Below, one piece after another: positions 10,027-37,200 of a stretch of 64,000 nucleotides of DNA. The position numbers and the translations under genes are program-made. This stretch comes from Marsupella aquatica (Eukaryota > Plantae > Marchantiophyta). The notes beneath the pieces were generated by a model. The model made no database searches, was not told the origin of the DNA, and was given only the letters and a program-made list of their open reading frames with translations. Positions within the stretch are counted from its first letter, which is position 1. Each line of letters begins with the position of its first letter. The DNA is taken from NCBI GenBank assembly GCA_973895155.1, contig OZ316898.1, forward strand, positions 12,985,659-13,049,658, written 5' to 3'.

Positions 10027-13000
10027 TTACCTATTCCCGTTTCCCCAAGTAGTGTCAAGATTGCGGCCAGGACCTGTCGGCCACTGCCGTAATCTAAGGT
10101 GGGGGTTAGATAAGAGTCCAGGAGCTTCTTGCAGAGGGCGGACAGGTTGATGCGGTTGGCCTAGCAGTCTATTAAGGTCTGCTTCCAACTCAGCCTTCTG
10201 TGCCTGTAGGTGCAATACAACATAACACACTTGCATTTCAGAGATCGGTTCCGAGCTAAACAAGCACGGTCCAGCACATCTCCTGTTGATATTCTCGGCA
10301 CTCAAATGGAACATAGTTCCATAAAAAAATGTTATGACTGCCAATGTAGTAGCTTTTCTGTGCTCTTGAGGTGGACATATATGATCGTTCTAAACATATA
10401 TGTATAGAAAGTGATGGTACATGGTAAATGAACACAAACAATTTGTATATTCATATCAATGGTATCTAGGCATTTAGAATGAGACAAATCACCTTTTTCA
10501 CTGAAAGCTCATCGCACAAGGCAGCCATTTCTGATTGGTGTTGGGCAGTACGAACATGGAGCTGGTGATGGCTCATCTGTCACCATCAAAAACAGGACAA
10601 AAGTAAGAAGCAAAGGAAGGGCGAGGCCAATGTGTTCACACCCGGAGTAAGATGCGTTGCCTTGCTAACTTGCTTTACCGATGAAGCTGAAATCGAAGAT
10701 GTCCAACGGAATTACGAACTCAACTCTCGACTCACTTGTGGAGGTTTACGTTTCCATGAACAGAAGTGATGCATCTAGAATTGCAAACGAAAGGTTTTTC
10801 TCTTTCAGTGCAGAGGAACAAACCGCGAGTCTTCACACACGAAGTACAAACAATTATCGTATACAACGCTCTCTCAAGGGTAAGCCTTATAAACGAGTAA
10901 GCAAGTTCAAATCACTTTTGCTTTTGCTCATTGGGTATCCATAATACTGAGAAAATAATGAAACGAGACGTGTAATTTTGTATCACCTCGAGCTCTTTGT
11001 TCGCTAATCGTGCAGCTTCTCTGGCTGCAGTTAATTGCAGTTCACAGCAGTTGAGTCGTTCCTCTAATAGATTCTGTCAAAGCAAAGAATAACAAGAATA
11101 TGATCTACCTCTAAGTCAAAATATAAAAATCGCGCAACTATGGACAACGTTTCAGAACCACTTGTGCTTAATTCGGAGAAAATATCGTTGTGAATTTGCA
11201 GGATGCGACCAAAAGAATGTCAGGTACAACTAATTGCACACCTTGTCTCGCACCAGCCAACTTGTTGCCTCGTCTAACTTCTGAAGTTTAGCTCGCAATT
11301 CTACCGCATCCTTCTCTGCCTTGTGACATCTTGCCTTCAACTTCTTCTCTACACTTTCCCGTTCTTTGTGCTTTTGAAGCTCAACACTCAAATCGTGCAC
11401 TCTACTCTCAGCTATTGCACAAAGTTCTTTCTGTTTCTCAATCTCAACACTTAGATTGTGCACTTTACTCTCAGCTATTGTACATCGCTCTCTCAACTCA
11501 TCTCTCTGTTTCTCTCGCAGGGTGATGATTGTGCTCAATGATTCATAGTCAACATCCAAACCAATCTCCTTGTCCCTCATGCTCCGCTCCCTCTCTGCCA
11601 ACTCAATTGCTTTGCTTTCCACCTCGCTGTTGAGGTCCTCCAGACGGCTTGCGATTTTGATTAGTTCTGAAGGGAACTCCTCCAGACTAAACTGACCGCC
11701 ATTTGCCACGTTCCTGGATCTCAGCAGTCCAGCTTCGGAGAGCTTGAGCTGGAATCTTTGGAAGTGCTCGTCAAGCCTCGACTTTTCTTCTAGTGTTGCG
11801 GTAAGCCTTGCAACCTCGGCCTCAGCTGCAGAGAGTTCAAGCTGGACATTTGTCCATTTGTTCTCCACAAGTGCTTTGTCTTCTATGACAGTCAGTAGCC
11901 TTAGAACTTCGGCTTCTGTGCTCTCAAGCCTCTTCTGAAATCTTATGTGCTCTTCTTCTGATAATGGTGTTGGCCCACAATGTCCAGAAGGGATTCCTGT
12001 CACTAAAGGGTCTGTTGCAGTGCCTTGTTCAACATATTCCTTAGGTGATGCTGATCGTCCTCCGAGAGCAGTTGTCAATCTCAACACTTCAGCTTGATTG
12101 CTTGTCAAGTTGCGAATCAAAGTTTTTTGCTCCTTCACTACTTTGCGACTCACTCGTAATGCTTTCGTGAGCTTTGAAACTTCTCCTTGGTTGCTCAAAA
12201 GTTCCAGCTGCAGTTTCTGCTGTTCAACTTCAAGTTCCGACTTGTCTCTCAGAGCAATTTCAAGATTGGATATCTTAGTCTTCCAGACTTCGACTTCCTT
12301 GCTCTCTTCCACTTGTCCCTTGTCTCCTACATCGTCTTTCAACCTTTGAATCTCAGTTTCCAAAACGGAGACTTGTGCAAGTAACTCAGCCTGTTGTTGC
12401 TGCAATCTCTCGTTCTGGCTGCTCAAGTTTTTAATTTCTGCTCTCGTGGCATCGAGTTCGACCATGAGTAGTCTGTGCTCGTCTATATAGGATTCTCTCT
12501 GCTCATCAGTTTGTCTCAACAACTTCGCTTCAGAGACATTTAGTTTAAGCTGAAGACCGTCCAGCTCTTCAATCTTCTTGATCAATTTGTCAACCTCCAA
12601 TTTTGACGTAGCATATTGAGTCAGCATTTGAGTATAATCCGTTCTCAACTTTCCTTTCTCTGCCACTTCATCGACAAGGTTTGCATTCAATTTTGCAACC
12701 ATAGCATTGGAATTAGTAAGTTGGGCAAGAAGTTCATTCTGGTGTTGCTCTAAATCACCTTTCCTTTGTAGCTCTCTGGTCAGGCTTTCAGTCAGTGTTG
12801 CCACTTCAGTTTCCAACCGCCCAAAATTTATTGAAACCTTCTTGCATTCGAGTTCCAATTTTTCTTTGTTCTGGAATTCCGAAGCTAGGCTGTGTTCCAA
12901 CTCCACCACTTTTCCTTCCAAACCAGCAAGCACATGAAGACAATTCTGATGGTTGTTCTTCAACACCTCTGCCTCCTCGTTTTCTCTGCTGACTGTCTTA

Positions 13001-16000
13001 GCCATTTCCTCATTAGTCTGAATTAGTTTTTCCTCTCGGTGACTGGTAAGCTCCTCAATAATTTCCTGATACCTATGCTCCAATCTAAGTCTGTCTTGCA
13101 CTTCTGTGGTCAAGGCTTCGTCCATTTGGCCTACTTTTGCTTCTGAAACGGCAATTTTATCAAGAAGGTTCTGTTGTGCCTTATCCAGTCCATCTCTCTC
13201 TTCTACTGCCATGGTAAGCTTCTTCAGAGTTTCCTCATACTTGGCTTCCAACGCCCTCCTCTTCTCCTGTTCTCTACTAAGCGTGGCAAGTATTTCCTGA
13301 TGGTTATCCTCCAATCTCTTCTTCTCTCCTAGTTCCCTGGTGACGGTTTCCGTCAATTGCACCACTAGTGCTTCTGAGCCACCAAGATTCTGAACAAGAG
13401 TCTCGTTAATTTCCTGATGTTTTATTTGCAGTACTCTCCTCTCTTCCTGTTCCTTGTGAAGGCTCTCAAGAATCAGTTGACGGTCTTTCTCCAATCTTTC
13501 CTTCTCTTGGAGTTCCCTATCAAGAGTTTCAGTCATTTGGATCAGTTGAGCTTCTGGCGCTAGGTGAAATTGGAGAGCACTCTGATGGTCCTCTTCTAGC
13601 TGCACCCTCTCTGCTTGTTCTTCAGCGGTAGCCTCGTCACGTGTCTCTTCGCTATCTAGGCCCAATAGATTCCTCTCCTGCCCTTTTTTTTTGCTGTGCT
13701 TGTTGAGAATTTCCAAGTGCTCTGTCTCCAGTCTCTTGTACTCGTGTATTTTGACTCTCAGAGTTTCACTTAATTGTTCCGCTTCAGATTGCGATGCAGC
13801 AAGTTTTTCAAGAGTATCTTGATGTGCTTTGTTCAATTGTTCCCTCTTTTCTTGTTCCGTACCAAATTCTAGAAGAATTTCCTGGTTCTTCGTTGCTTTG
13901 GATTCAGATGAGGGAAGTTTAGGATGACTATCAGCATGCGTCCCCAGCAATAGTTCGTTCTCCTCATGTTGTTCCTTAGCAAGCTGCTCAATGCCCTGGT
14001 GATGCTCTTCCAAGCTTTTCTTCTGTTCTTGCTCTCTGGTAAGCTGGGCACGAATTGCGTGAAGCTTATTCTCCAATTCTCTCTTCCCAAGTGCCTCTGC
14101 AGCCAGTTTTTCAGTCAACTGCAAAACTTCGGTTTCTAAGCTAGCTAGATTATCCAGCAGTCCCTGATGTTTCGTCTCGAGGACTTCCATCTCTTTTTGA
14201 GGATCAGTTGAGCTGGGAAGATTTCCCAGATTCCTTTCCTCCCATTTTCTCCTGACTTCTTGATCTCTAGTGAGCTTTTCCAGCATTTCCTGATATACTT
14301 CTTGTATAGCTTCCTTTTCTTGTTGTTCTTTTGTGAGTTTACAATTCAGCTCAAGATTGTTATCGCCTAAGAGTTTTCTCTCTTCCTGTTCTTTGGCAAG
14401 CTTGTCAAGAGTTTCCAGGTGAACTTCCTCCACTGTTGCTCGTTCCTTCTTTTCTCTGGCAAGGTTTCCGGTCAACCTTGCAGCCTCTGCCTCTGACTTC
14501 GATAGCTGGACTGAAAGACCCTTCAACTCCTTTTCTAATTTGACCTTTTCTTGTGATACTGTGTCCAGTTTTGCTGTCAAACTAGCCACTTCGCTTTCCA
14601 AGTTTTCCAGCTTGTACATAAAGTTGGTGTGATCTTGCTCCAGGATACTCTTATCTTCCAGTTGGCTGGTAATTATCTCGGTCAACCTTGCCACCTCGGT
14701 CTCAGATTGGACCACTCTATCTAAAGTCTTGCTGTAATTGTTCTCCAGTGTATCCATCTCTTCGAGCTGTCGAGCCAGATTGTCAGCTTTCCCACGAAAG
14801 ATGATGAGTTCTCTTTGTTGTGATTCCACACGTGATAGTGTATCCTCCAGCAATTTCGTGACCTTAACAACCTCGTTCTCCATGCAGACCAATTTGTGTC
14901 CTTGCGCTGCTTCGATCCTTTCCTTTTCCTCCAATTCGGCAGTTAGTTCCGCAACAGTGTGTTCTGAGCTTTTGAGCTTGATCAAGACTTCTTGCCGAGC
15001 CTTGTCATTGTCCTCTATTTCTCGTTCCAGTCTCTCAACCTCAGTTTGCGATAAAGAAAGATCAACTTGAAGCCTTTTAATTTCCTCTTGCAGTCCTGCT
15101 TTTTCTCCCAGGGTATTAGTTAACCTTAAAATCTCAGCCTCTGTTGTGCTTTGTCTTGATTTTGAATATTTCTTCTTCTTCTCCACCTTTGATTTCTCTA
15201 GAGCTTGAGTGAGCCTAAGCACATCTGTTTCTGCAATGTCAAACTTAAGTTGCATGTCTGTCTGTTTTTTCTCTAGCTCCGATTTCTTCTCAAGAGCCTG
15301 GGTTAATGAATGCACTTCAGATTGTGCAGTGTGGAGTTTGCATTGGATTTCGGAGTACTTTTCCTCTAGCTGCAGATTTTCTCGTTTCCAGTTCTCACGT
15401 TGGGATTCAAGCTTCTCCACTTTGCTTTTGTACTCTTGCTCGATAGCTGAAAGACGAAGTTCAGAGGCACTAGCAGCTTCTTTCATGGCTACCCTGACTG
15501 AAGACAGCTCATTCAACAAGCTTTCGTTGTCTGAAAGGACTCTTAAAACGCCACTTTGTCTCTCGACAACACATTCCAACTTGGCTAGCTCAGACTTCAT
15601 TGAGTGAAGTTCTTTTTCTGACGAAAGCTTTCCTCGTCTCAACGCTACAAGTTGCAGCTTCGCCTTTTCCAATGATTCAGATAGATCAGATGTGGCACAG
15701 CTTAGGACCTTGAGTTCAGCAACACCTTCCTGCATAAGTGAGACTACGATTCAATTCACAGTAAATTGATTCATCGCACCCAGGAGAAAAAGGAAGGACA
15801 AACGACATGATTTCACGACAACCTTGGTACAAGCTATAAGTTGATCAGTTCTTTTTCACATGTCCATTCAATCCCTAAAATGTCTTAGTTGATATGATAA
15901 TCAGGCCCAGTGTATAAACCTGGAAACTCTTCAAATCAGCATTTAATGTTTGAAAGGTCTCCAAAACCAGTTCCAGTAGGGCATCAGATACAGATAACGT

Positions 16001-19000
16001 AGACTCCACTTCAGCCTTCAGCTCACCCACAGCAGCAGCCAAGACTTGGAGACTGTTATTATCACCATTGATGTCCTCCTAAAGCATAAAAAGGTCCTGT
16101 CATGTTATTGTCCGTCCTTTGCCTTCCTGTTTGCTTTATCTTGCCACGTAGGTACTATATTCTTAGTCTTGGTCACGTGTATTCGAAAATTCCTTGGTAG
16201 ACAAATTCCTAATCCTAGAGGACTGCAGACCGTGCAACTTGCACATCTCTTGTAACTGACTTTGCGCACAAGGACTTTCTTACAACGCTTCCAGGAAAAT
16301 CCCCATTTGAAGGTGCCTCTAAATGACAAGTGATTGGTAGCGTTCCCCTACCCTCATGTCAATGAGACACAATGATGCTGCTGACTTGGTGGTATATTGC
16401 TATGAAGTGGATTGCAACATCTTCTTATTGAAGACATTGGAAGGCTTTTAAGTGAATTGCTTCTGTGGACCAAGTTTGTGACATACCTTGATCGTGCAAA
16501 CGTTAACGTTGTCCTCGCTTTCATTCCTGCTTCCATTGATCTCCTTCAAAACCCTCAATAATCCATCCCTCTCGTCCTTAAGAGCTGAAATGGTCTCATT
16601 TGCGATGGCAAGCTCTTTTCGAAGGTTGGAAATTTCTGACCGGCCTTGGAAATTTTGGTACTTTTGGTATACCTGTAGTCATTTGTAGAACAGAAAATTC
16701 AAGACCTAGATCAAACCAAATCTACTGACATTTTTCGAAAGCTCCCGGTGCTACCTTCGTGGAACTCAAATGCAATTTTTCATTCTTTTGCTATCTTTTC
16801 TATCATGTTGTCTTTCTGGAAAGGTCATTCATTCTGTCACTCATTCCCAGTAATGCTAAAATAGCCGAAGAAAAACAAACACCATACCGTGACACGTAGA
16901 CAGAAAATTGAAGCTCGTGGAGGTGAAGGACACAAGGGCTAAACTGTTCAGTATTAACTCGTGTCTGGTAAATGTTTTTTTCTTGGAGGCATTTGCGTTG
17001 GACATGTCCCCTCATCTCTAGAAATGTTTTTTGGATTCATTATGGTGCAGGGAAGGAGCGGTTTCAGGTCTGTTCAGTACTCCCAAATTTCCGATGACGG
17101 CCTAAAGCATGTAGGTTTTTACAATTTGGATCTAAGAACCAGCCAAAAGATAATCAGATCTAGGTCTGGTCTAAGAAGCTTCTAAAAATCCAGAATGATC
17201 ACAAAACACAAGCTTGATAATAACTAACAGAATACATCTAATCTTTCAGAGAAGAAGAGTACGTACAAGGTACAAGTCCTGCCTGGGCCTTCATTCCTAT
17301 CAAGCACTCTCTCAGTAGGGGATTCATGGGCTTCAAAATCAAACAAATTAAACTGAATTAAATTAGATTCTAAACCAGATACCTCTCAAGACAGAAATGC
17401 TATCGGCGCCAGGAGAGTGGAACTATCACTGCTGAAAAGAATTGCTGTTAGCAGAAGTTCATTTTAAAGTCCAAGAGTCCCCGATAGAGCCCGCGGCGGA
17501 AGTTAACCGAATTGTATTCATTTGAAAGTCCAAGAATCCCCGATTGAGCCCAAGGAAAGAGAGTATGACGTAGCTTGTCTACTGGAGGTAACCCAATGGC
17601 TACGAGGAATGCAACAAAGTGAACGAACTGTTGATGTTCCAACTGAGATAGGAAGTTTGGAGACTAAATAACAGGCAGTACGTTGATGGATATGGATAGA
17701 AAGCTCAATCAGGAAAGCATGCTCAACCTTCAAAGTAACAATCTTGCATGCCCTAAATCCTAATCTTTCAGGTGAATTTTTTTTTCAAAGCTTAGAAAGA
17801 TTTCCTGGGTGAGATTACCAAGCTAGTTGACAAACCAGATGATCTGAACAAAACTGGGGAATTTAATAAGCCAACCCTTCGTTGAGCTTCGTTGTCTTTC
17901 TCTCTTAGTTTGGAGCTTCTGCTGCTTAGTCCTTTCTATCCCTTGTTTCGTTAGAGGGTTTGTGAACCAATTCATTGATTTTTCTAGAGGGACTTGGTCG
18001 TTATTAGAATTCAGGTCCATCAAAATGATAAGGGAATCTTATAAATCGGTTTGTAATTCGAGAAAATGTGAAATGTATAAGTTTTGACTCACACCAAGGA
18101 GCTCTAATGGGTTTGATATAAGGGTGATATTCAACGAGTTCATGTTCACAAACCTTGTTGGCCTTAGATTTTCGCTTGTTCTGTGTATGCTTGCCTTCCG
18201 TTTCATTCAAAATATTTTGTTGTTCTTCACTTTCCTGTGATATACAAGATCGTGCTTCGGCATGCTGCCTCACCACGCTTCCCGGAATTCCTAGTCCTGT
18301 CTCCGGCACTTCCCCTTCAAACTTTGCGACACATTTCGAATTTGCGTCCTGTTGTGGCGTTCCTGACCCTTTTTCACCATCGCTTAGGACAATCTCAATG
18401 AGTGTATCATCGGTGTGGATCACAGATAAGTCTCCATGTACCTGTCTTCCCTCAGCATCAAATTGACCCTTTAGAGACTCTACTGCATCACTAGAGGTTG
18501 TTTCTTGCTCACAGAGTCTTTTCTCCATTATGACCAGTGCATCCTCGCTGTGGATAGCAGATAAGTCTCCATGTACTTGTCTTCCCTCCGTAGCATATTG
18601 ACCATTTAGAGACTCTACTACTCCTGTTTCTTGCTCACACAGTCTTTTCTCCATCAAGACCAGTCCATCCTCGCTGTGGATAACAGATAAGTCTCCATGT
18701 ACCTGTCTTCCCTCAGTATCATATTGACCATTTAGAGACTCTACTGCTTTTGTTTCTTGCTCACAGTGTCTTTCCTCCAGTGCATCATCGCTGTGGATAA
18801 CAGATAAGTCTCCATGCAACTGTCTTCCCTCGGCATCAAATTGGCTCGTTGGCGACTCTACTGCTTTTGTTTCTTGCTCACACAATCTTTTCTCCATCAT
18901 GACCTAGCACAACTCATACAATCCATTGTTAATCTGTGTCCAAAGAGATAGCAGCCAAAACTTTTAGACGACGTGTTTTAGCGATATATGGGATCAGACA

Positions 19001-22000
19001 CCAACCCCTTGCTGTTTCAAGATCATCCCTTACTTGCTTTCGTAAATATATTAGACAGCTCTCCAGGTCATTACAATTTTAATTTGACTTTATAGAATGA
19101 CTTACATTAGCTAGATTTCCATACATCGTACCTTCTCTTTTTCCAGCTCTTCAATTTTTTGTTGCAGTTTTCTGCAATCACCAGCCTTTTTAGCTAAATG
19201 CTCCTGGTGCTCGTTGTCTTGTTGTTCAATAAGATCTCTCAGCTCTATCAGTAGTTGTCTCTCTGCAATTCCTTCAGCCTTAAGGTAGTTCAACCCTCGT
19301 GCCATTTTGGACTGAAAAAGTACTTCCACCTGTTCAAGCTGTGAAAACGGATAGGATTATGTCAATAAAATCTACTCACTGGTATGGTCTGCCCATGACA
19401 AGCTTCTGCCGTGGTGTATTCTGTTTCTTCGAGATATGTTGGTAAAATCACGGGAAAGAAAAGCACTTGAGTGAAACTTTCTGGTCTCCACATATTGATT
19501 GCTACATAGAGTCACACCAAGGCGCATTTCACCTTTAGGATGCACTTCAGATATCATGCAGCAAACAAAGTTAGATAACTGTGTTGTCAACACTTTTTCC
19601 TTGATAGAAAATGGAGGGTACGGTGACAGCTCTACCACAGCACCTTTTCTGCAACATTGCCTGTAGAGGACCGTCTCTTCCTTTTGCTTCCAGAACGTGG
19701 GCTCAACGAAAGTTCTCCCGAGGCTCGTTTTAAGAGATGATCGGCATCTTGAAACTCCTCAGTTTGAAGAAAGTTCTCGATGTATCCACGGAGAGCTTTT
19801 GTCTGTGAATAAGTGCTAGTGTCATCCTGTGATAAGAGTACGGAAAGAGATCTAGTCACATGAATATTGAGTAAGGTGGTGAACTCACACGCAATATGTG
19901 ATAAGTCATTGGCCGACCAGAAAGACTGACCGGGAAGGTAATCCAGAACGCCTGATCACTTCTCCGGATTCCTTTCCGGAGGAGATTGCAAGTATTAAGA
20001 TTCATCAGAATTGTCAAGAGTTTTTGACCTGACACCTCACTGTTTAGGAACTTTAGAGTTCGATCGTGCCTAAATCCACATACAATCACAGTCTGTCGAT
20101 AGAAGAAAGGACGCACCAGCTGCATTTCATTTCTCCTCTCAAATTCGAAATCTCCTTCTGTAATTAAGTTCTGCCCCTTTCGGTCTTCTTTATACTCTGA
20201 CTCAGATCCACAAAGTAAGGACGCTTTTCCAAATCGTTCAATGGACATTTGCTCCCTCTCTAGCTCAATCTGGTGGGAAGACAAAATCAGTCTAATTAGC
20301 ATTTTCGACATCTGCAATTAAAGGCCAAATATGGATAAGTGAACAACGCTTGAAGTGGTGAATGAGTCGATAATGAAGTAGTGGGTAGAAGGTGCAAGGT
20401 GCAGATCTGCCAAAACAGCGAAGATGAAGCAAGCAACACCAGGAGCACGGAAAATGGGCCAAACAATATTAGACACTGTATACAAAATTGAGGATGAGAG
20501 TAAGTTCATCAAACATGTAGCACATATTTAGGGTGGAAAGTAACTGTACTAATTTGATAGAAAAGCACAAAGTAACATTCGCATCTCCAAAGCAATTCTG
20601 CCTTACCATTAAAAGAGCATTTTGACGGTTGACCACATCTTCCATTTCCTGCGAGTCATCTTCTTCCTGTTCCAAACGCGCACAGATCTTTTAAACATGG
20701 AAGACGCCACTAATATTTCGGTGGAATTGGAGGTCGATTGTTCAGGATGTGCATAATCATCGTCTATTCTTCCGCCCTCGACCCTTAGCACTGTGATGAG
20801 AATGAACTATAGGATTCACTATGGTAGCTTTTCTCAGTGCAGAGGATGCAGAAAATAAATTTATCATTTTCTGCAAAGGATTCTCCGTTTTCAGATCATT
20901 AGGGGGTGGGGGACAGAATGAATGCATTGGAAGTGTAACTTTTACGAATAAGTCGCTGCAAGACAGAATTTTAGTACACAAAGAGTGTACATAGTCGAAC
21001 ATGAAGAAAGTTACGAATTCCTTACTTTGAGTTTGTTCCGTGGCTCCTCCGTTTCCCTTCTTTGACGTTTGAGTATGGGCCTACTTCTCCAGAACTTCCA
21101 ACAAACAAGGCCTTTCGTATGAGAACGCTACGACTGGAGGAGGATTTTTCGTTATCTCAAACAACAGAAACAAAAGATAATCGCTCCTTTGTGACGCGGT
21201 CATGTGACTCTATCTACCCAATTGCTCCAACAAACGCTCCAGTTTCATATGTACCTACTACTGTAAACTTACACAAGGGAAGCACAGAGGTTCCAACATC
21301 TAGTTTAAATATCTCAGCGCTCGAGAATCTTTGCCCTGACTTAAGCTGTTTCCGACCTAACAAAAATATAGCATGACGGTTGCTTACCTCATCCACTTTG
21401 AAGGAATTCATCACTCTGGTTGCTTTAGCAGCGAACGTCAGTGTCTCTACTGTGGCATCCATGTGAACCTGCCAATGCCCCAGATTACTCTTTTGTGAGA
21501 TAATCTGAAGGACGAAGGGCTTGCCCAAGAACTAAGGGGAGAAGGGATGTTAAAGGCTAAAAGAAGGATCACACTTCTCCCATCTCTTGCTGAGCAGTCT
21601 TTGACTACGTATGGCACCACCACAAGCGACTTCAGATTTTGTAAGATTGAGCAAGTTGCTGGTCTAACGCCACGCTGTCAGGTCTCCCATGAAGTTAGTT
21701 ATATGATAACACCTGTGGTGTAGTCTAACTGAGACCCCAGTGTGCCTCTTTCGAAGTTTAATATATTATCTTAGAATTGGAACTGACATGTAGGAAGGTA
21801 AGGTCCCGGCTATTTAAATCTAAAAAGTTGGCGGTGCAATGAGCCTTTACCATAGCTGGGGATACATGGCAGATAAAGCAGGTTCTTGTATTTCCTCCCA
21901 AAGATGGCTTCAGGAGACATGTGAGCTTGCTCTCAGCATAAGGCAATGACTCCCTGCAGAGGACATGTTGATCTTAGTACTGATTTCTCTGTTACATAAT

Positions 22001-25000
22001 CCCCTACATCAAGTTTTCGTGTCCTGCTTCGAAGAGTCAACATAAGTCCTCATCCACTTTTCTGTGATGCCTGATTTATGGAGCACGTTGCTCTAAACGT
22101 CCGCAAAACTTCACTTTGCGCTATGTTAACTAGTACTTATACGCACTGAAGGTGTGTGCTGAGAACAGGGATCCACAGACGGACAAATGCAAAGTTAGTG
22201 CAACTACGACTTAAATATCCACGTTCGTATGGATTCATGGATCTGAAATTGTGGAGGAAATGCTGGCTTGAGGTACCCTCACGCCAAGCACACGTAAGAC
22301 TATCGTCTGCAGGAGAATGAAGAACCTAACACTCACCCTTTTGCTTCAGCATTTTCACTTAACTTGCTCACAACCGTATCTAGAGTGATCAAGCTTTTAT
22401 CGGGTTTAATCTCCTCCAACAAAGCACCGTCGTTCTCCACAACTCCAGTATGGGCAGCAACAACTTCAACCAAATTCTAGTAAAGTCGCCCAAATGAAAC
22501 CATGAGACCAGAGTTAAAAAACATTGATGTACGAAGTCAGCTGCGCATTATGAGATGAAAAGTCTGCATCTAAAGACTGATCCGCTTGAGTCAGAAATGA
22601 TAGAAAGGCGGTAAGAGACCCTTACTGCCTCACATCAGGAACCAACTTTCTACAGACTATTTGAAAAAGTTATTCCACATCCCTTGGAAGACAACAACGG
22701 GTGGATATCCGTCAATGGCAAAAGTCTACACACTTTCTTATCGAGCCAAGGGCAACCATACCAACACAGAAATCTGAATCGCGTCACTTGCTCCTGGACT
22801 GAGAACATTTTCCTGGTTGTCAAGACTACTCTCAATGACCTGAGTCCAACCAAAAAACGTATTGGTAAGGTTCTCTGAAGCTGTGGTCTTGTCCAAGACT
22901 TCACTTCTTGGATGAGTGTGAGTAATAGCATAGGAATCAAGGAAGACACAATACTCATTTGCCCATTGAGTTTAAGGCTGCTGCCCTTTCACATTTGCCT
23001 GAGAAACTTTAGAACATGAAAAGTTAGAGATCACCGCGTTGTTTAGTTAGACCAGTTTTCTCTACAGACGATCACTTACCACCTGAAAAATAGAATGTGA
23101 TCTTCTTCTGCAATCGTTTGCATTTTTTAGATCCTCTAACCTGCGAGCTGTAAGATGAGTTCAATTTAGAAATCTTTTCTCGCTGTTGCCAATTTTCTTT
23201 CGTTTCTTTTAAGTGATCTTTAATTGGGACAAAGGAGCAGAACGTATGATTAGGCACCAAACAGCTCTGGCCACAGAAAAGGAATACGATCACGAAAATA
23301 AAAACTGCTTTTGGAAGTTTTTTCACTACAGCTGCCAGAGGGACATCAGCTCACCATCTGCATACTCGAGAAGAGCCAATACTTGCTCTGTTCCGATAAC
23401 TATCTCCTCTCTCAGACCAGCCACAACAATACCGCCCTGCAGATCACAACCAGATTCAGCAAGCCATGCTTTATAATAATGGTCCTCCATTCCAGTCGGC
23501 TCCTATTGTTCTCCAACACTAATTCCGAAATACCTTGGTAATAAAGGAAAACTAGCGACTAGATATAGTAGTGCTCTAGTCTTTGAAACAAACACACGAA
23601 CAAAATATATCTAGAGGAAAAGACTCTTGTTGCATGCCTGGACGTGTTCATGCACATCCAGCTTCTGGTTCTTCGAAGCAAGAAGGTCAACGAATTCCTC
23701 ATTATCCAATTCGAAGTAGGACACACGGACTAAAAATACCCTGGCCTTTTCCTGCATTTTGAAAGCGATTAGATAAAGATTAGCAGCTCATGCACTTTCG
23801 ATGGATGCTTCCTGAAATATTCTCCTGCCATGTGAGAAGCATCGACCAACAAAATAAACTTTACCGACACAGAAGTCCCCCCAAACTACTATCTCACTTT
23901 GCGAGCTTTCATCGCACAATGTGTGGATTCTTCGCATTTAGTGTGAACGACCTGTCATACAAAGTGCAGGTAAACATTCCGATCATGTTGCAAATATTAT
24001 CAGGTCATAAAGAAACGTGCCTCCTGGATTCTGTTGAACACATCCTGCACTGCAAGTACTAGAACGCCCCTTTCGTCGGGGAGTCCTCTCATGGTAAATG
24101 TCTTCCCGCTGCCAGACTGACCATATGCAATTATTGTACCTGGAACAAAAGAAGTTTTAGTGAAGAGGGACAGGACTGGTATCCTGGAGGGACTACCATG
24201 AAATGCAGAGATAACTCCGATTGCAGTGTTCCTGCTGAGTGGACAAAAACGTCTGGGGTATGCTTTCTTCAAATGAACCTTTTAAGTATGTAGAAAACCC
24301 TGCTGTATGTTTCAATTTTACGAGCACAGCTCAATATTTATCTTATAATATTTCTTTATTGTTCAGTAAATTGTAATTGTGTTCATGAAGCTTGGAATCA
24401 AATTATCGTCGTCTAGTCATCTGTTCGAAGGGAAGCAAGTACAATCTGCCATTGATTGCATGCTGCAGGGCGAGTGCATCCCAGAAAATTAATAGGAATC
24501 AGGAACGAAGTACTAACCACTGACACCAGAAACTGCTGAGTGAATAATACCCTTGACATGTGCTTCATAGATATCCAAGGTGGTACCTTTCGTACCATAG
24601 ACTCTATCTGCAATCAAATACACAGCAAAGAAATACAAAATGAACAAGATAGACAGTCCAAGGATACGATCCAGATGACAGTCCAGGAGCGTTTGACAAG
24701 GACTGAAGAAAAACCTACTTTCCAGTACTTCTATGAGCTCAGTGCCTGCTTCACAACGCTCGTTGGTTTGTACTCAGACTTTGCCACTTGCGACGGACAC
24801 AAGTTACTGAATCGGCTCTGTTGGAAAGGTGGACAGGTGCAGCTTGAAAGGCGATGTGATTTTGGAGGCAGCGGCAAGTACTACCCTCTGGAAATATCTG
24901 CATTTCTTCCGGGGCTGCGAGATCATGCTCAAACGGATCTTACGAATAAGGTACGGTGACAATGAAGGCCGCCCCCGCCCCCCCCCCCGTAAAGCCGCCT

Positions 25001-25483
25001 CCGGAATATGTTAATAGGCTCGGCCGAATTGATTATTATCTGGTGTTTCCATTGAAAATTATCTGTTCTTTCCGCAATGGATTGTGTCGCTCTCAATGAT
25101 GAGCTCGACCTAGATTGCCAAATAGTCGGATAATCGAGGTGGGCTCTAGCCTCATCGTGAGGTCCATTCAGAGGCAAGATGAGTACTTGATACCTATTCA
25201 CTGAATACAAATGAAGGGATATAAAAGACAGTTGTAGTGCTAATTTGTTGATGACGGAATCTAGTCCTAATTAAACGGCATGCATACAAGTAAGCCCAGA
25301 AAACGGACCGTAAGTGAAGGAGTAGGAAGGCACAGAAGGCCGGCAAGTCTTTGAAGAAGCAATTGATTTGGACGAGAGCTTCCAAGGGCTTCTCTGTGTG
25401 GCTTCTCCCTTGAGCAAAGGACGAACACGAACTACGACGGTAATTTTTTCCATTTTTTCGTCCTTGTTCTCTTCCATGGCCAT
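10027..25483 (-). CDS. Kinesin-7 (CENP-E-like) protein with degenerate motor motifs and a giant coiled-coil tail (roughly 2,600+ aa)
   Basis: Motor exons: 25483-25309, 24607-24518, 24139-24021, 23751-23638, 23436-23355, 23147-23080, 22839-22762, 22476-22337, 21953-21851, 21468-21388. All are phase-compatible and encode MEKITVVVRVRP, YGQSGSGKT, GIVVAGLREEIV, SKLTCLLKPSLGGNTRT and ETLTFAAKA. Tail exons include ~20688-20607, ~20270 region, ~19830-19640, ~19330-19132, 18903-18154, ~16672-16487, ~16051-15920, 15729-11242, 11073-10987, ~10561-10493 and 10203-10027. Some tail junctions are not resolved. Confidence 0.88.
18403..18903 (-). repeat. Coding tandem repeat: 4 copies of a ~39-45 aa unit in a kinesin exon
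   Basis: Unit (V)xMEKRLCEQETxxVESLxGQ(F/Y)DxEGRQVHGDLSVIHSxDxL x4. The DNA CAGATAAGTCTCCATG recurs at ~18423, ~18558, ~18684 and ~18801. Confidence 0.92.
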
Positions 25484-27786
25484 TTTCTTGGATGCTGAAG
25501 TTCTTGGCGGCTAGAATTCGGCTGCTACCGAACTCTTGAATGATTCTGTTGTGCACAGACCTTTTAGCTCATGCTAAGTATTCTCGAATTGCAGGGGGCC
25601 TCATCTTGGGGCCAGAAATGTTACCAATAACTGAAAACAAGAGCAAGAGAAAAAGCAAGGCTCAAAAGCAAGCTATTCAGCCATAATGTGTCTCTGCTGA
25701 ATTCCCGATGTCAAACATGCCATCATCAAGCTTCAGGCTTACTACAACGGGAAAGAGGTTGGAAGAGCCAGGCGGACAAACAGTCTCTGGTGATAAACGG
25801 GAAACGGAAATAGAGAAAGACCTACAGACAGGCAGTCAATCAGAGGATAAAAAACCTTTGTCCTGGAGAGCACAGTAATGGCGTCACAGTTCAGAATAAG
25901 AGATGCATTCGATTGCAACACTGAGACAGAGAGAGAAAGAGAGAGAAAGTGCAACTGAATTATGGACGCTCTACGCACCCACCCAGGTATACAATTCTGC
26001 CCCCATGAGAGCGGTGAGGCAGAGGCAAAGAAGTTAAAACCTAACCGACTTCTCCGGTTCCCTGGTACAACAGGAAGTCCACTACATTTGAACAATGTGA
26101 AACCTGACTTTTTTTAACATCTGACTATCCACTCCTTGTATTGGGATATTCAACGGGTCTCTCAAGGAAACCAGACTCCTCCGGCCTTTCGATATCCCTC
26201 CACGCATCACACGGTACCTTATTCTACGATCCAGAATCTCAAAACAATGGCGACATCATTCCGACTCCACTAAAACTGCAAGATGCCTGCAATTTCGATA
26301 ACAAAACTCGCCTTTCCGAATGTGGGTCTGTCCTGTCTTACAACAAAACTAACAACCCTTTCCCCACCTTTTCTTAGCCAAAGTGAGAGCCCAACGTCCT
26401 TAAATTTCATGAAGTCGTCCCTTCCCTCTCTACGCAAGAACAAGGTGCAAGGACATCACTCGTAACGGACGTAATCATACAAACAGGTCCTTGGGGTAGG
26501 GGACGCACTGCCTCCTCTGTCAATCCCTGTAGCCCACAGTCCAAACCTTTGTCCCGATGAGAGCATCAGCTGGTGTGAATGCATGCTTGGTCCAATCGCT
26601 GGACTTATTAACCCCAGGCGGTGGCGAGCTTATAGTGTGCCTGAGTTCCAGTAACTGGAAGTTCACAAACGTCTCGCTAGCTTCCGTGCCTTTCACAGTC
26701 ATGGTGCAGCACCTGGCAATGTGAATGGAACTCGTCATCACATTTTTACTCCTACAACCCCCGACGTTTGGCCTGCAATCCGTTACGTTGCGATACTTGA
26801 GCTAACAGCGGCGAAGTTGGCCTGATAACAGTGGTTGCATTCACACTACGTGATTCCCTCATCGGGTCCGTGAACGGGACCACATAAGGCGAATGCGGTA
26901 GCTCGGCAGAACAAGCTCCAGTGTAAATTTGGGGAAACCACAATTCGAATGTGAGTTAGCTCACAAAAGACAGCATGTGCTTGAGCTCTTTTCATTCTTG
27001 TGCGTCAGTCTCTACAGCACAGCCAGCATTTGGAGCTAATAACAGCAGTACTGACCATACAGCCAATGAATTCGAGCTGGATGAAGTCCCTGTTGTCATT
27101 TGCTTCACGAGGCTCGAAGATAAAAGTGGTCAAATTCAGGGACTCCATTGGCCCCATTTGCCTTCCAGCGGATGGATTGAGCAGGATGACACAAAATCAT
27201 ACGGCAAAACCGGGCGATGCTCACCTTCTTTATTTCGGAACTCAAATCTTCAATCCCCATGTCTCCCATTCAACCAACGATGAACTTGTTCTTGAAGAAG
27301 ACCAAATGTGAATGCAATTCATGAAAGTAGACATTACAGAATACAGATGCTGTGCTGACCAGTTTCAAGAGTTGCACTCATATCTCATATCCCAGGGAAT
27401 CTGGAACCTCGAAACAATGGGATTGCGCGAACGAGGACAGCCCAGCCAAATTGCTCATCAGGAATGATTGTGGCAAGCAATGTATGGAGATTCAAGCTCG
27501 GACGTCAGCATCAGGTCCAGCTCGAAAGCTGGTTTGCTTTGATATGCAACATCCCGACTCCTCTGTTTTAAATAGTCACAAGTTGGGGATCAAAAGTATA
27601 GATATTTATTACTAAGAAAGCCGGAAAAGTACAATGGAGGGGACAATTTTTTAAGGGTTTTAGGGAGGGGATGCTAAGAATGTTCTTTATCAGTTTTTCC
27701 TCCATTACATATTTATATTCCTAGGGACAGATATCCTTAGATTTTAGGACACATCCCTTGATTTAAGGATGGCCCTTAGATTCTGG

Positions 27787-34269: not shown

Positions 34270-37200
34270 GCTCAACGGTTTCCTAGGCTAGCGGTGGCGC
34301 CGTTTCTCGACCTGATGCGGTGGGCTCTCTCCATCGCCTCCCCTTTCTTTTCACATGCCTCGGTTGGGTCTTTTGTCGCTTCTTGATGCGTTTTTGCTTT
34401 TATCGGGTTGCGGCCTGTCATGTCTACGTTGAGAGTGTTGGCGCGGGGCAAGCGCCCAACCCCACCCCACACTTCTCCCCCGTCCTCCCCTCCCCCTCGT
34501 GGCCGTCTTCGTGTTTGCTCTTCTTCACTGGATCTCTCTCATCTTCGTGATGATCCCATGCCCGATGCTCTGCCAGTCCCCCCCGTCTACTGCCCACCCC
34601 ATCGTCGCCCTGGCTCCTCTCCCCACCCCATTCCCCCTCCACCCATTCATCATCCTCCTTCGGCCTCCTCGTCCACATCTGTTCCACCCCCACCTCCTGT
34701 CCAGTCTTTCCCTGCTCCCTCCCCGGACGAGCGTCCCCTGCATACTTGTCCTGACTGTGGATGGGTTGGCATCTCCCTCCCTCATCATCGCGGGCGGGGC
34801 CGGTGCCATCGTCGCCAGCAAGCACAATCCCAGCCTCAGCCCCCTATTGACCCGGTTAGCTCTGCCCCTCCCTCCTTGGAGGCTCCCGAGCAGGCATGGA
34901 GTTGGGTTCGCACTCTAGACCCCCTTCCAGCCTACCATCCAGGGTACATTAGACCTCGCCTTTATAACCACATTCCTCTGGCGCTGCGCCCTATAGTTCG
35001 GTCCTCCTTGTTGCAACTCATGCAGCTTATCTTGGCGCATCCTATGGAGGTCTCCTATTGGTCTTTACTGATGTTTTTACCACAGTGGACTCTTACCCTC
35101 CCTAGTCATGGTGGTCGTGTGGGTCACCGTGAGACTGCCTCTCGTATCCATCGTTTTTTGCGGGGAGATTGGGAGCAGCTTCAGGAAGAGTACTTTCTTC
35201 GCGCCCGGTCTTTTACCGCCCGTGCTTTGTCTGACCCAACTCGCCACTCTCATCCCCCTGAGCATAGACGTCTTCGTCGCTCTTGTCGTTTAGCCCAGGC
35301 TGGTGAATATCGTCGGGCTGTCCAGGCCCTTTCTCCCACCACACCAGCCCCCCCCTGGCGAGGTCACCTCGTTGGCCCTTCAGGATCTCCATCCGCAGCC
35401 CCATGATCAGCTCCCTTTGTTTGTCGAAGATTTTGAGCCTGAGGAGGATCTTCAGTTTAGTAGGGACCACTTCACCTATGCCTTCCTCCATGCCCCGCGT
35501 TGTTCTGCTGGTGGCCCCTCCGACTATGTCTTTGAGCATTTTCGTGATTTATTCCCCCCTGAGGATCCTCAGTTTGGTTTTCCAGTTTTCTTCTCCTTTT
35601 GCCAGTGTATTGCAGCCGGTCGTTTGCCTCCTCCCGTCTCTCGGCTCTTGAGTGCTTCTCGTTTATTGGCCATGGCTAAGTCTTCACCGGGTGTTCGGCC
35701 AATTGCTATTGGGGAGGTTTTTCTTCGTCTTGTGTCTCGCACACTTTCCTCACAGTTTCGCTCTGCACTATCGGATCATCTCTCTCCACATCAGTTTGCA
35801 GTTGGCGTTCCTGGCGGTTGTGAGACGGTTATTGCGGGTATTCGAGCTACATTGGACCTCCACCCTGATTGGGTTGTCCTCCAGGTTGATGTCTCTAACG
35901 CTTTTAATACGGTTTCTTGGGCAGCCATTTTTCGTGCTTTGAGGGCGGCGGATCCAGACATCCAGTCCCTGATCCCCTTTGTCCGTTGTTTTTATGGACT
36001 CGAGGCCCCACTCTTCTATAGTCATCACTCCTCTACAGGTGTGTATACCACTCTTTCCTCTGCAGAAGGTACACGTCAGGGTGACCCTTTGGGTGGGCCT
36101 CTTTTTGCCATTGCCCATTTTACAGCTTTACGGGAAGCTGCCATGGCCCACCCCCAGTGTATCTTCCCCTCCCTTTCAGATGACACCCACATCATTGGTC
36201 CTCCTGCCGCGGTTACTTCTGCCCTCGCCACTCTTTCCACCCATTTGATGGGCCTCGGTTTACGAGTTCAGCCTGTGAAGAGTCGTGCATGGAGTCCAGC
36301 TGGGTTACCCTCTGATCTTGTGCTTCCCCCAGGGTTCTTACGTCCAGCCGATGGTCTTCGGGTCCTTGGCTCCCTAGTCGGTACCGCCTCCTTTTGCTCA
36401 TCTTTCATCGCTGACTCTATACAGGCTGCCTTAGCCCATACTCCTATGCTCCCTAAGTTAGCAAATTCTCAGGCAGCATTTGGGATGTTGTTGAGGTGCA
36501 TCCACCCTCATGCGTCTTATCTGGCTAGGACGCATCCCCCTATCGAGGATCTTTGTCTCCACCTTTGAGCATTTGATGTCTCCATTCGTCAGACCCTGGC
36601 CTCTCTTTTAGGTCCGGGTACGTTGCTCTCATCTCCGTGGCTTCATCGACAACTCAGTCTTCCTATCTCGCAGGGTGGTTTTGGGCTTACTTCCATTGAG
36701 AGCCTTGCACCTTTGGCCTTTTTGGGTGCATGGGCGGCCGCCTTCTCGTTGTTGGCCGATCGTTTTCTTATTGAGGATCGCCCTTTTTTACTTTCATCTC
36801 TCATGGAGGTAGAGGAGGGTTCCCTCCCGTTTCAGGTTCATTTGCGCACAGCGCGGTCCTCATTACCAGATCCCGTTCGTGCCGCGTTACCTTCTTTCCA
36901 GGAGTTTTTATCCTTGGATCCCGTTCGTCTTCAGGCAGACCTCGCTGGGCGTATGCACACTTTCACCCTTTCCAGCATCCTCTCCGAGGCACCTGACACA
37001 GACCGAGCTCGGATTCTTTCTTCTGGAGGGAAGGGCGCAGGTGGATGGCTTCAGGCCAATCCAGTCATTCCTCATTTGCGGATGTCTTCAACGGTGTTCT
37101 CCACAGCCATGCGTCTTCGTCTGGGGCTGCCCCACCCACTTCTTGCAGGTTTACCTCCTTCTTGCACTTGTGGGAAGCCTTGTGATGCCACAGGTGTCCA

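What the first reader, a model, noticed from the sequence alone, without database searches (positions are those of the whole stretch)
21388..25483. Candidate catalytically dead kinesin-7 (pseudo-kinesin) with both switch motifs replaced
Seen after splicing ten phase-compatible exons: the P-loop is retained (YGQSGSGKT). Switch I NxxSSRSH reads NDCRRRSH (23118-23095). Switch II LVDLAGSER reads LVEVVAAHT (22476-22447). L11/alpha4 EGxxINKSL reads EEIKPDKSL, L12/alpha5 HIPYRDSKLTRIL reads SLPYAESKLTCLL, and EIYNE reads ELDNE. There are no stops or frameshifts and the splice sites are intact. Known: the switch I serines and the switch II Asp/Gly/Glu are essentially invariant and required for ATP hydrolysis, and the L12/alpha5 arginines bind tubulin. 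Non-catalytic kinesin-fold partners exist in yeast (Vik1/Cik1 with Kar3). Inference: a maintained, non-motile CENP-E paralogue that may bind nucleotide without hydrolysing it, acting as a scaffold, tether or heterodimer partner. I am not aware of such a kinesin-7 class in plants. This is the best candidate for an undescribed system in the window.
Basis: partly seen in the sequence, partly recalled or inferred. Interest (0 to 1): 0.88.

Follow-up and report, generated by a model that had tools for sequence, protein, structure and literature searches.

The report
Liverwort kinesin-7 with dead motor
This liverwort gene encodes a giant CENP-E-type kinesin that has lost its ATP-hydrolysis and microtubule-gripping motifs, yet selection has kept the motor fold in every liverwort sampled, so a motor protein appears to have taken on a non-motor job that nobody has described.

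Summary
Ten phase-compatible exons (25483-21388, minus strand) encode a 350-aa kinesin head. The P-loop (GQSGSGKT) and RVRP are kept. Switch I reads NDCRRRSH, switch II reads LVEVVAAHT, and L11/alpha4 and L12/alpha5 are degenerate. This head is only the N-terminus of an intact 22-exon, 2,550-aa gene (25483-10027) that includes a 4.5-kb coiled-coil exon.

Orthologues with the same lesions and the same exon structure exist in Calypogeia fissa (two copies), Marchantia polymorpha (Mp1g17810, "hypothetical protein"), Riccia fluitans and R. sorocarpa. The dead head therefore predates the split between Marchantiopsida and Jungermanniopsida.

Motor dN/dS is 0.23-0.35, against 0.08 for a canonical paralogue. 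The switch region is nearly neutral (0.5-0.8). A liverwort-only central tail domain is the most constrained part (0.10).

The clade nests in the KIN-7O (CENP-E-like) group on a very long stem. Liverworts also keep two canonical CENP-E-like paralogues.

The microtubule-binding face has flipped from net basic (+3 to +5) to acidic (-1 to -8). My best reading is a maintained, hydrolysis-dead kinesin-7 that works as a scaffold rather than a motor.

I found no paper that describes it. RNA reads could not be obtained, and the biochemistry is inferred.

The parts
10027..25483 (-). Whole gene: 22 exons, 7,653-nt CDS, 2,550 aa, with no internal stop
   Evidence: Model built by orthology to the Calypogeia fissa loci and checked for splice sites and reading frame
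21388..25483 (-). Kinesin motor domain, exons 1-10: 25483-25309, 24607-24518, 24139-24021, 23751-23638, 23436-23355, 23147-23080, 22839-22762, 22476-22337, 21953-21851, 21468-21388. Together they encode 350 aa.
   Evidence: Pfam Kinesin hits on exons 3, 4 and 9. The canonical paralogue has the same exon lengths, 90/119/114/82/68/../103/81.
24099..24122 (-). Retained P-loop (Walker A), GQSGSGKT
   Evidence: GxxxxGKT is kept in all six clade members.
23095..23118 (-). Switch I remnant NDCRRRSH, replacing NxxSSRSH
   Evidence: The orthologues carry different residues and 1-8-residue deletions here; only the final S-H is widely kept.
22447..22476 (-). Switch II remnant NLVEVVAAHT, replacing NLVDLAGSER
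   Evidence: LVEV(A/V)A is conserved across the clade. The exon is 140 nt against 146 nt in the canonical paralogue.
22390..22416 (-). L11/alpha4 remnant EEIKPDKSL, replacing KEGxHINKSL
21911..21949 (-). L12/alpha5 SLPYAESKLTCLL, replacing HVPYRDSKLTRIL
   Evidence: Net charge from switch II to alpha5 is -5 here, against +3 to +5 in canonical kinesin-7.
21026..21094 (-). Exon 11, a degenerate neck (FWRSRPILKRQRRETEEPRNKLK). It is homologous to the CENP-E/KIN-7O neck (TDAALLKRQxxEIxxL) but contains two prolines.
18154..18903 (-). Exon 16. It holds a 126-nt tandem repeat (about 42 aa, 3.3-4 copies) and an NLS-like KRKSKANK at its end.
15325..16672 (-). Central conserved tail domain: exon 17 (16672-16487), exon 18 (16078-15920) and the first ~135 codons of exon 19. 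It is the most constrained part of the protein and is found only in liverworts.
   Evidence: Invariant fraction up to 72% across five orthologues. Omega is 0.10. Alignment A1. The exhaustive profile search finds only liverwort proteins. No Pfam family matches.
11242..15729 (-). Giant exon 19 (4,488 nt, 1,496 aa), a purine-rich coiled-coil stalk
10027..11073 (-). C-terminal exons 20-22 (11073-10987, 10576-10493, 10203-10027 including the stop codon), forming a conserved C-terminal region
25746..25807 (.). Cluster of three MSA-core (AACGG) elements at -324 to -267 from the ATG. This is a candidate G2/M-phase promoter element.
   Evidence: The background density is 1.05 per kb, and only two such clusters occur in the 64 kb. 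Suggestive only.

Best explanation
The locus is the orthologue, in a leafy liverwort close to Calypogeia, of Marchantia polymorpha Mp1g17810. It is a liverwort-wide paralogue of the CENP-E-like kinesin-7 subgroup KIN-7O.

Shown:
- It arose by duplication of a canonical KIN-7O-type gene, keeping the same exon structure and a homologous neck.
- It then passed through a burst of change (stem branch 0.92 substitutions per site). That burst removed the two gamma-phosphate sensors (the switch I serines; the switch II Asp, Gly and Glu) and turned the L11-alpha4-L12-alpha5 microtubule face from basic to acidic.
- It kept the P-loop, the RxRP base-binding motif and the core fold.
- Since then the head has been under purifying selection, about three times weaker than in a working motor. 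Constraint is concentrated outside the switch region.
- The strongest constraint in the whole protein lies on a liverwort-specific central tail domain.

Inferred:
- The protein cannot hydrolyse ATP or walk, and probably binds microtubules poorly through the classical interface.
- The head may still hold a nucleotide as a structural ligand, and serves as a folded interaction or regulatory module at the end of a long dimeric coiled coil.
- The cargo or anchoring function lies in the conserved central and C-terminal tail domains.
- NLS-like basic clusters and MSA-type promoter elements point to a nuclear or mitotic role, as a non-motor scaffold working beside the two canonical CENP-E-like kinesins.
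For: - Motifs and exons were verified in the sequence.
- Five orthologues from Marchantiopsida and Jungermanniopsida share LVEV(A/V)A, loss of SSRSH, PDK(S/C)L and PY(A/C/N)(E/G)SKLT. All retain GxxxxGKT and RVRP.
- Exon lengths and phases are identical in five loci, including a clade-specific GC donor in intron 4. The canonical paralogue has the same exon pattern.
- dN/dS: motor 0.35 (bootstrap 0.23-0.50) and 0.31 against the two Calypogeia copies; 0.23 in the Riccia pair against 0.079 for the canonical motor in the same pair; switch region 0.81 and 0.47; central tail domain 0.10.
- Tree: the clade has 100/100 support and sits inside KIN-7O. The AU test rejects union with the KIN-7L/N clade (p=0.0002) and does not reject a liverwort-specific duplication (p=0.36).
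- The neck is 47-59% identical to KIN-7O.
- Net charge of the microtubule face is -1 to -8, against +3 to +5 in canonical kinesins.
- The Marchantia gene has five annotated isoforms.
- There is an MSA-core cluster in the promoter.
Against: - Transcription and the two GC-donor junctions are therefore unverified here.
- No ATPase, nucleotide-binding or microtubule-binding data exist. Loss of function is inferred from what is established about the kinesin switch I and switch II residues.
- The intron-3 GC donor is unique to this species and could impair splicing.
- The head could not be folded, because a joined exon model has no reference.
- The mitotic or nuclear role rests on short motifs only. 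The MSA enrichment is weak in the Riccia promoters.
Confidence: 0.72

Rival explanations
1. It is the non-catalytic half of a heterodimer, in the manner of Vik1/Cik1. The dead head would pair, through the KIN-7O-like neck and first coiled coil, with one of the canonical CENP-E-like kinesins and modulate that motor. This is a more specific version of the main reading, not exclusive of it.
For: - In the Marchantiopsida orthologues the neck and first coil are 47-59% identical to KIN-7O.
- The segment NRxNALLMIELEREQMS is kept in all members.
- Canonical paralogues are present in the same genomes.
Against: - In the window and in Calypogeia the neck carries helix-breaking prolines, and one annotated Calypogeia model omits it. 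A neck-coil pairing is therefore not conserved across the clade.
- The tails share no detectable similarity with the canonical tails.
- The protein has its own 2,000-aa stalk, which is typical of a homodimer.
- No binding test was run.
Confidence: 0.18
2. It is still an active but unconventional ATPase or motor, using non-canonical residues in place of switch I and II.
For: - The P-loop and RxRP are retained in all members.
- The head is under purifying selection.
Against: - The equivalents of the switch II glycine and glutamate and of the switch I serines are all replaced. Established kinesin mutagenesis shows each of these is needed for hydrolysis.
- The replacing residues differ between orthologues, and switch I has deletions of up to 8 residues.
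- The switch region evolves almost neutrally, with omega 0.5-0.8. That is not expected of a catalytic site.
Confidence: 0.06
3. In this particular genome the copy is a recently disabled gene, for example through the GT>GC change at the intron-3 donor, even though the family is functional elsewhere.
For: - The intron-3 donor is gcacgt only here; all orthologues have gtaagt.
- There is no RNA evidence.
Against: - 2,550 codons across 22 exons have no stop or frameshift.
- Omega is 0.33 over the whole gene and 0.10 in the central domain against Calypogeia.
- GC-AG introns are functional in plants, and this gene already uses one at intron 4.
- The context AG|GCACGT is close to the GC-donor consensus.
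Confidence: 0.05
4. The degenerate motifs are artefacts of a wrong exon model, and the true exons encode canonical motifs.
For: None found.
Against: - No SSRSH or DLAGSE coding potential exists in any frame of the window.
- Independent annotations in four other genomes give the same exons and the same motifs.
Confidence: 0.01

Closest known systems
Plant KIN-7O / CENP-E-like kinesin-7 (Arabidopsis At3g10180 group; Marchantia 'centromeric protein E' paralogues)
   Same: - N-terminal motor, at 41-45% identity.
- Identical exon structure in the motor.
- Homologous neck (ALLKRQxxEI) and first coil.
- Very long coiled-coil tail.
- Nested within this clade in the tree.
   Different: - Switch I, switch II, L11/alpha4 and L12/alpha5 motifs are lost, and the microtubule face is acidic.
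- Motor dN/dS is three times higher.
- The tail is not detectably similar and carries a liverwort-only conserved domain.
Vik1 / Cik1 (yeast Kar3 partners)
   Same: A kinesin-fold head without catalysis, kept by selection at the end of a coiled coil. This comparison rests on my own knowledge.
   Different: - Vik1 has lost the nucleotide-binding site altogether, sits C-terminally, is not recognisable by sequence as a kinesin, and still binds microtubules.
- Here the P-loop is intact, the head is N-terminal, Pfam recognises it strongly (8.8e-69 for the Marchantia orthologue), and the microtubule face is degraded.
- Heterodimerisation was not tested.
KIF26A/KIF26B (kinesin-11) and KIF7/Costal2 (kinesin-4)
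   Same: Animal kinesins with a recognisable motor domain but no or very slow ATP turnover, used as scaffolds or signalling platforms. This comparison rests on my own knowledge; KIF7 is treated as a non-motile scaffold in bioRxiv 10.64898/2026.02.06.704517, listed.
   Different: They belong to different kinesin families and to the animal lineage, and they keep microtubule binding as their main activity. The liverwort protein derives from kinesin-7 and has an acidic microtubule-binding face.
KAC1/KAC2 (KCA) plant kinesin-14 members
   Same: Plant kinesin-like proteins with a divergent motor domain and no detectable motor activity, retained across land plants. This comparison rests on my own knowledge.
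   Different: They are kinesin-14 with a different architecture and have an actin and chloroplast-movement function. They are unrelated to the CENP-E lineage.

Membership tests
Kinesin superfamily (motor-domain fold, PF00225) | Significant match to the kinesin motor-domain profile over its full length | tested here: met
   Window exons 3, 4 and 9 hit PF00225. The Marchantia orthologue matches profile positions 1-325 of 327 at 8.8e-69, against 1e-104 to 1e-107 for canonical paralogues.
Kinesin-7, CENP-E-like KIN-7O subgroup | Phylogenetic placement of the motor within the subgroup | tested here: met
   The careful ML tree nests it in the land-plant KIN-7O clade (85/90, not starred). The KIN-7L/N clade excludes it (100/99). 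The AU test rejects union with KIN-7L/N at p=0.0002. The long stem (0.92) makes the exact sister group uncertain.
Kinesin-7, CENP-E-like KIN-7O subgroup | N-terminal motor followed by the CENP-E-type neck (VNE-x-TD-ALLKRQ-x-EI) and a long coiled coil | tested here: met
   The neck is 47-59% identical to KIN-7O in Marchantia and Riccia. It is degenerate, with prolines, in the window and in Calypogeia. A 1,496-aa coiled-coil exon follows.
Kinesin-7, CENP-E-like KIN-7O subgroup | Shared gene structure with canonical members | tested here: met
   Motor exon lengths x/90/119/114/82/68/78/140/103/81/69 compare with x/90/119/114/82/68/66-78/146/103/81/69 in the canonical Riccia paralogues.
Catalytically active kinesin ATPase | P-loop GQTxxGK[ST] | tested here: met
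   GQSGSGKT in the window. GxxxxGKT is present in all six clade members, with variable inner residues (S/C/P, G/R, S/C).
Catalytically active kinesin ATPase | Switch I NxxSSRSH | tested here: not met
   NDCRRRSH in the window. The orthologues read NCRRPH, YGLSH, RFSH and GSH, with deletions.
Catalytically active kinesin ATPase | Switch II DxxGxE (DLAGSE) | tested here: not met
   EVVAAH in the window; EVAAAK, EVAAEK and EVAPAK in the orthologues.
Catalytically active kinesin ATPase | Measured microtubule-stimulated ATPase or motility | not testable with these tools
   This needs purified protein.
Vik1/Cik1-type non-catalytic kinesin-fold partner | Head lacks a nucleotide-binding site | tested here: not met
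   The Walker A motif and RxRP are retained.
Vik1/Cik1-type non-catalytic kinesin-fold partner | Obligate heterodimer with a catalytic kinesin | not tested
   No complex prediction was run. A predicted coiled-coil pairing between related necks would not distinguish homodimers from heterodimers.

The most novel reading that the evidence does not exclude
The protein could be a structural component invented by liverworts: a nucleotide-locked, non-motile CENP-E derivative. Its head would have become a protein-binding module. Its liverwort-only central domain would anchor it to a lineage-specific mitotic structure, such as the polar organisers (the centrosome-like MTOCs known only from liverworts) or the kinetochore-fibre interface. 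This would give a molecular handle on how liverworts organise spindle poles without centrosomes.
Probability: 0.12. Interest if true: 0.85.

Novelty: new variant of a known kind. Interest (0 to 1): 0.62.

Why it matters
Dead enzymes kept by selection show how protein folds are re-used. Non-catalytic kinesins are known from a few families: Vik1/Cik1, kinesin-11, KIF7/Cos2 and plant KAC. None is known from the CENP-E/kinesin-7 lineage, and none as a lineage-wide liverwort innovation.

Here the case can be followed up directly.
- The orthologue Mp1g17810 is a single-copy gene in Marchantia polymorpha, where knock-outs and knock-in tags are routine.
- Two canonical CENP-E-like paralogues in the same genome serve as internal controls.
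- The pattern of constraint says which parts to test. The P-loop, the core fold and alpha5-alpha6 are kept, the switch region is free to drift, and a novel tail domain has omega 0.10.

The locus also shows that 'kinesin motor domain-containing protein' labels in bryophyte genomes hide non-motors.

Tried and rejected
Searches were made exon by exon by reference or with database orthologues. As a result no structure prediction or fold search of this head was possible, since all orthologues exceed 1,200 aa.
- Complex prediction was not used. A predicted pairing of related coiled-coil necks would not separate homodimers from heterodimers.
- The PDB sequence search with the switch II exon gave only noise.
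- Pfam on the tail exons found nothing.
- The ESM Atlas search of the central domain returned only generic coiled-coil clusters. The first attempt failed on a length limit.
- Literature searches for Mp1g17810, Mapoly0001s0120, KIN7O, Marchantia with kinesin-7 or CENP-E, and pseudokinesin terms found no description. Three papers were opened and found irrelevant.
- Earlier scan notes on kinesins in this genome concern other loci 5 Mb away.
- Rejected readings: an exon-model artefact, a recent pseudogene, and membership of the KIN-7L/N clade.
Full report
**Observation**

On the minus strand, ten exons between 25483 and 21388 join in frame to a 349/350-aa kinesin head with no stop.
- P-loop GQSGSGKT: 24122-24099.
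- Switch I remnant NDCRRRSH: 23118-23095.
- Switch II remnant NLVEVVAAHT: 22476-22447.
- EEIKPDKSL: 22416-22390.
- SLPYAESKLTCLL: 21949-21911.
- ELDNE: in exon 4.

Searched exon by exon by reference, Pfam Kinesin is hit by exon 3 (6.8e-13), exon 4 (1e-4) and exon 9 (1.6e-9). The switch II exon hits nothing kinesin-like in Pfam or in the PDB.

- Introns 3 and 4 use GC donors.
- By orthology exon 6 ends one codon further on, at 23080 (donor gtaagt).
- The gene continues well beyond the finding.

**The whole gene**

Downstream lie a 1,501-aa open frame (11230-15735) and further coding blocks. Guided by the closest orthologue, the complete model has 22 exons (25483-10027), a 7,653-nt CDS, 2,550 aa and a single terminal stop. 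Its parts are:
- the head;
- a degenerate neck exon (21094-21026);
- linker exons with NLS-like basic clusters;
- an exon with a 126-nt tandem repeat;
- a strongly conserved central domain (16672 to about 15325);
- a 4,488-nt coiled-coil exon;
- three C-terminal exons.

No frame anywhere in the 64 kb encodes SSRSH or DLAGSE, so there is no hidden alternative exon.

A note on method: the joined model was not sent to any search or fold tool. It was assembled only inside scripts for alignment, trees and dN/dS.

**Relatives**

Searching with the big exon by reference found four proteins only: Calypogeia fissa (2,548 aa), Marchantia polymorpha Mp1g17810 (2,168 aa), Riccia fluitans and Riccia sorocarpa. 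A second C. fissa copy appeared later.

All of them carry the same lesions: LVEV(A/V)A in place of LVDLAGSE, switch I reduced to ..SH with deletions, PDK(S/C)L in place of INKSL, and PY(A/C/N)(E/G)SKLT in place of PYRDSKLT. All keep GxxxxGKT and RVRP.

Threading each annotated protein onto its locus shows the same exon lengths and phases in all four loci. It also shows the same GC donor at intron 4, which the canonical paralogue lacks.

The window's genome is a close relative of C. fissa, with dS of about 0.28-0.32 to both homeologues, which differ from each other by 0.04. The dead head therefore predates the split of Marchantiopsida and Jungermanniopsida.

**Selection**

| Comparison | Region | dN/dS |
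|---|---|---|
| Window vs Calypogeia copy b | motor | 0.35 (bootstrap 0.23-0.50) |
| Window vs Calypogeia copy a | motor | 0.31 |
| Two Riccia species | pseudo-kinesin motor | 0.23 |
| Two Riccia species | canonical CENP-E-like motor | 0.079 |
| Two Riccia species | tails (pseudo / canonical) | 0.34 / 0.35 |
| Window pair / Riccia pair | codons ~200-300 (switch I to alpha4) | 0.81 / 0.47 |
| Window pair | first 200 codons | 0.24-0.30 |
| Riccia pair | first ~195 codons | 0.14-0.17 |
| Window pair / Riccia pair | alpha5-alpha6 segment | 0.14 / 0.22 |
| Window vs Calypogeia copy a | central tail domain | 0.10 |

Within the head the constraint is uneven. The switch region drifts almost neutrally, while the N-terminal half and the alpha5-alpha6 segment are held. 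The central tail domain is the most constrained part of the protein, with up to 72% of columns invariant across the two liverwort classes. This is a maintained gene whose catalytic loops are free to drift while the fold is kept.

**Family placement**

The Marchantia head finds angiosperm KIN-7O next after the liverwort orthologues (41-45% identity), then animal CENP-E. Its neck is 47-59% identical to KIN-7O.

Liverworts also have two canonical CENP-E-like genes. Both are annotated 'centromeric protein E' in Marchantia, whereas Mp1g17810 is a 'hypothetical protein' with five annotated isoforms.

In a careful ML tree (LG+C20, 41 rows):
- the pseudo-kinesin clade has 100/100 support;
- it sits on a stem of 0.92 substitutions per site;
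- it nests in the land-plant KIN-7O clade (85/90);
- the KIN-7L/N clade (100/99) excludes it.

The AU test does not reject a liverwort-specific duplication of KIN-7O (p=0.36). It rejects union with the KIN-7L/N liverwort genes (p=0.0002). The long stem means the exact sister group remains uncertain.

**The tail**

The tail has no Pfam family and no BLAST similarity to canonical kinesin-7 tails. An exhaustive profile search of 1.84 billion representatives with the central domain (alignment A1) gave only:
- the liverwort orthologues;
- an isolated fragment in R. fluitans;
- one weak metagenomic hit.

The Atlas search gave only generic coiled-coil look-alikes.

**How it probably works**

What is established about kinesins is that the switch I serines and the switch II Asp, Gly and Glu sense the gamma-phosphate and position the attacking water. 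Here all of them are replaced, by different residues in different orthologues, so ATP hydrolysis and stepping are very unlikely. This step is inference.

Retention of Walker A, the following aromatic residue and RxRP through deep time suggests that a nucleotide is still bound, perhaps as a structural ligand. This is also inference.

The stretch from switch II to alpha5 is the main tubulin-contacting surface. It has 5-7 basic residues and a net charge of -1 to -8, against 10 basic residues and +3 to +5 in six canonical kinesin-7s. Classical microtubule binding is therefore probably weak, which argues against a simple rigor-tether model.

I therefore read the head as a conserved folded module for interaction or regulation on a long dimeric stalk, with specificity residing in the central and C-terminal tail domains.

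Three MSA-core elements lie within 60 nt at about -300 from the ATG, with 3-5 per kb in the Calypogeia promoters. Together with the NLS-like clusters, this hints at G2/M expression and a nuclear or mitotic role. That evidence is weak.

A Vik1-like heterodimer with a canonical kinesin-7 remains possible. However, the neck has acquired prolines in the Jungermanniopsida.

**Known or new**

Full-text searches for the gene identifiers, KIN7O, Marchantia with kinesin-7 or CENP-E, and pseudokinesin terms found no description. The papers opened were irrelevant.

Non-catalytic kinesins are a known kind (Vik1/Cik1, kinesin-11, KIF7/Cos2, plant KAC). A kinesin-7-derived, liverwort-wide one appears undescribed, so I class it as a new variant of a known kind.

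**Limits**

- No RNA reads were available.
- There is no structure model of the head.
- There is no biochemistry.
- Haplomitriopsida and other bryophytes were sampled only through the protein databases.
- The head-based search for relatives outside liverworts was limited by word matching and protein length.

Noticed in passing
window 18499-18904 (exon 16, minus strand): A 126-nt tandem repeat of 3.3 copies (a ~42-aa unit, MEKRLCEQET...GDLSVIHSEDAL, present about four times) sits inside a coding exon. Both Calypogeia fissa orthologues have a single unit, so this is a recent in-frame expansion.
   Followed up: partly
window 23637-23636 (intron 4 donor) and 24020-24019 (intron 3 donor): The GC-AG intron 4 (gcatgc) is conserved in all five pseudo-kinesin loci but is GT in the canonical paralogue. 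The intron-3 donor is GC (gcacgt) only in this genome; the orthologues have gtaagt.
   Followed up: yes
L006:957-1526 (ENA metagenome assembly ERZ24794449, 2.7-kb contig): A very distant match (20-24% identity, E 3e-9) to the central tail domain, split by an intron at the same position (..FQ|E.. against ..YQ|A..). The organism is unknown. It may be a relative from outside the sampled liverworts.
   Followed up: partly
L005:3001-3309 (Riccia fluitans, another chromosome): An isolated 102-aa ORF, 67% identical to part of the central tail domain (P0238). It is probably a dispersed gene fragment.
   Followed up: no
window 21094-21026; L001:7254-7322: In the window and in Calypogeia the CENP-E-type neck has become FWRS(R/I)P(I/V)LKRQRRETEEP.NKLK, with two prolines. 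In Marchantia and Riccia it is still canonical (KALLKRQ.REI..L). One of the two C. fissa gene models (P0001) omits this exon.
   Followed up: partly
window 36827-36921: This is the only other cluster of three AACGG/CCGTT cores within 100 nt in the window. It lies inside the stretch that another note of this scan calls a CRE-type retrotransposon.
   Followed up: no
L001:9378-9461 and L001:18929-19016: The C. fissa model P0005 has an extra 84-nt exon and an extra terminal exon. The sister copy's model (P0001) has neither, and no counterpart was found in the window: there was no match to the 84-nt exon, and the last exon's weak match has no AG acceptor. These are probably annotation differences or alternative exons.
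   Followed up: partly
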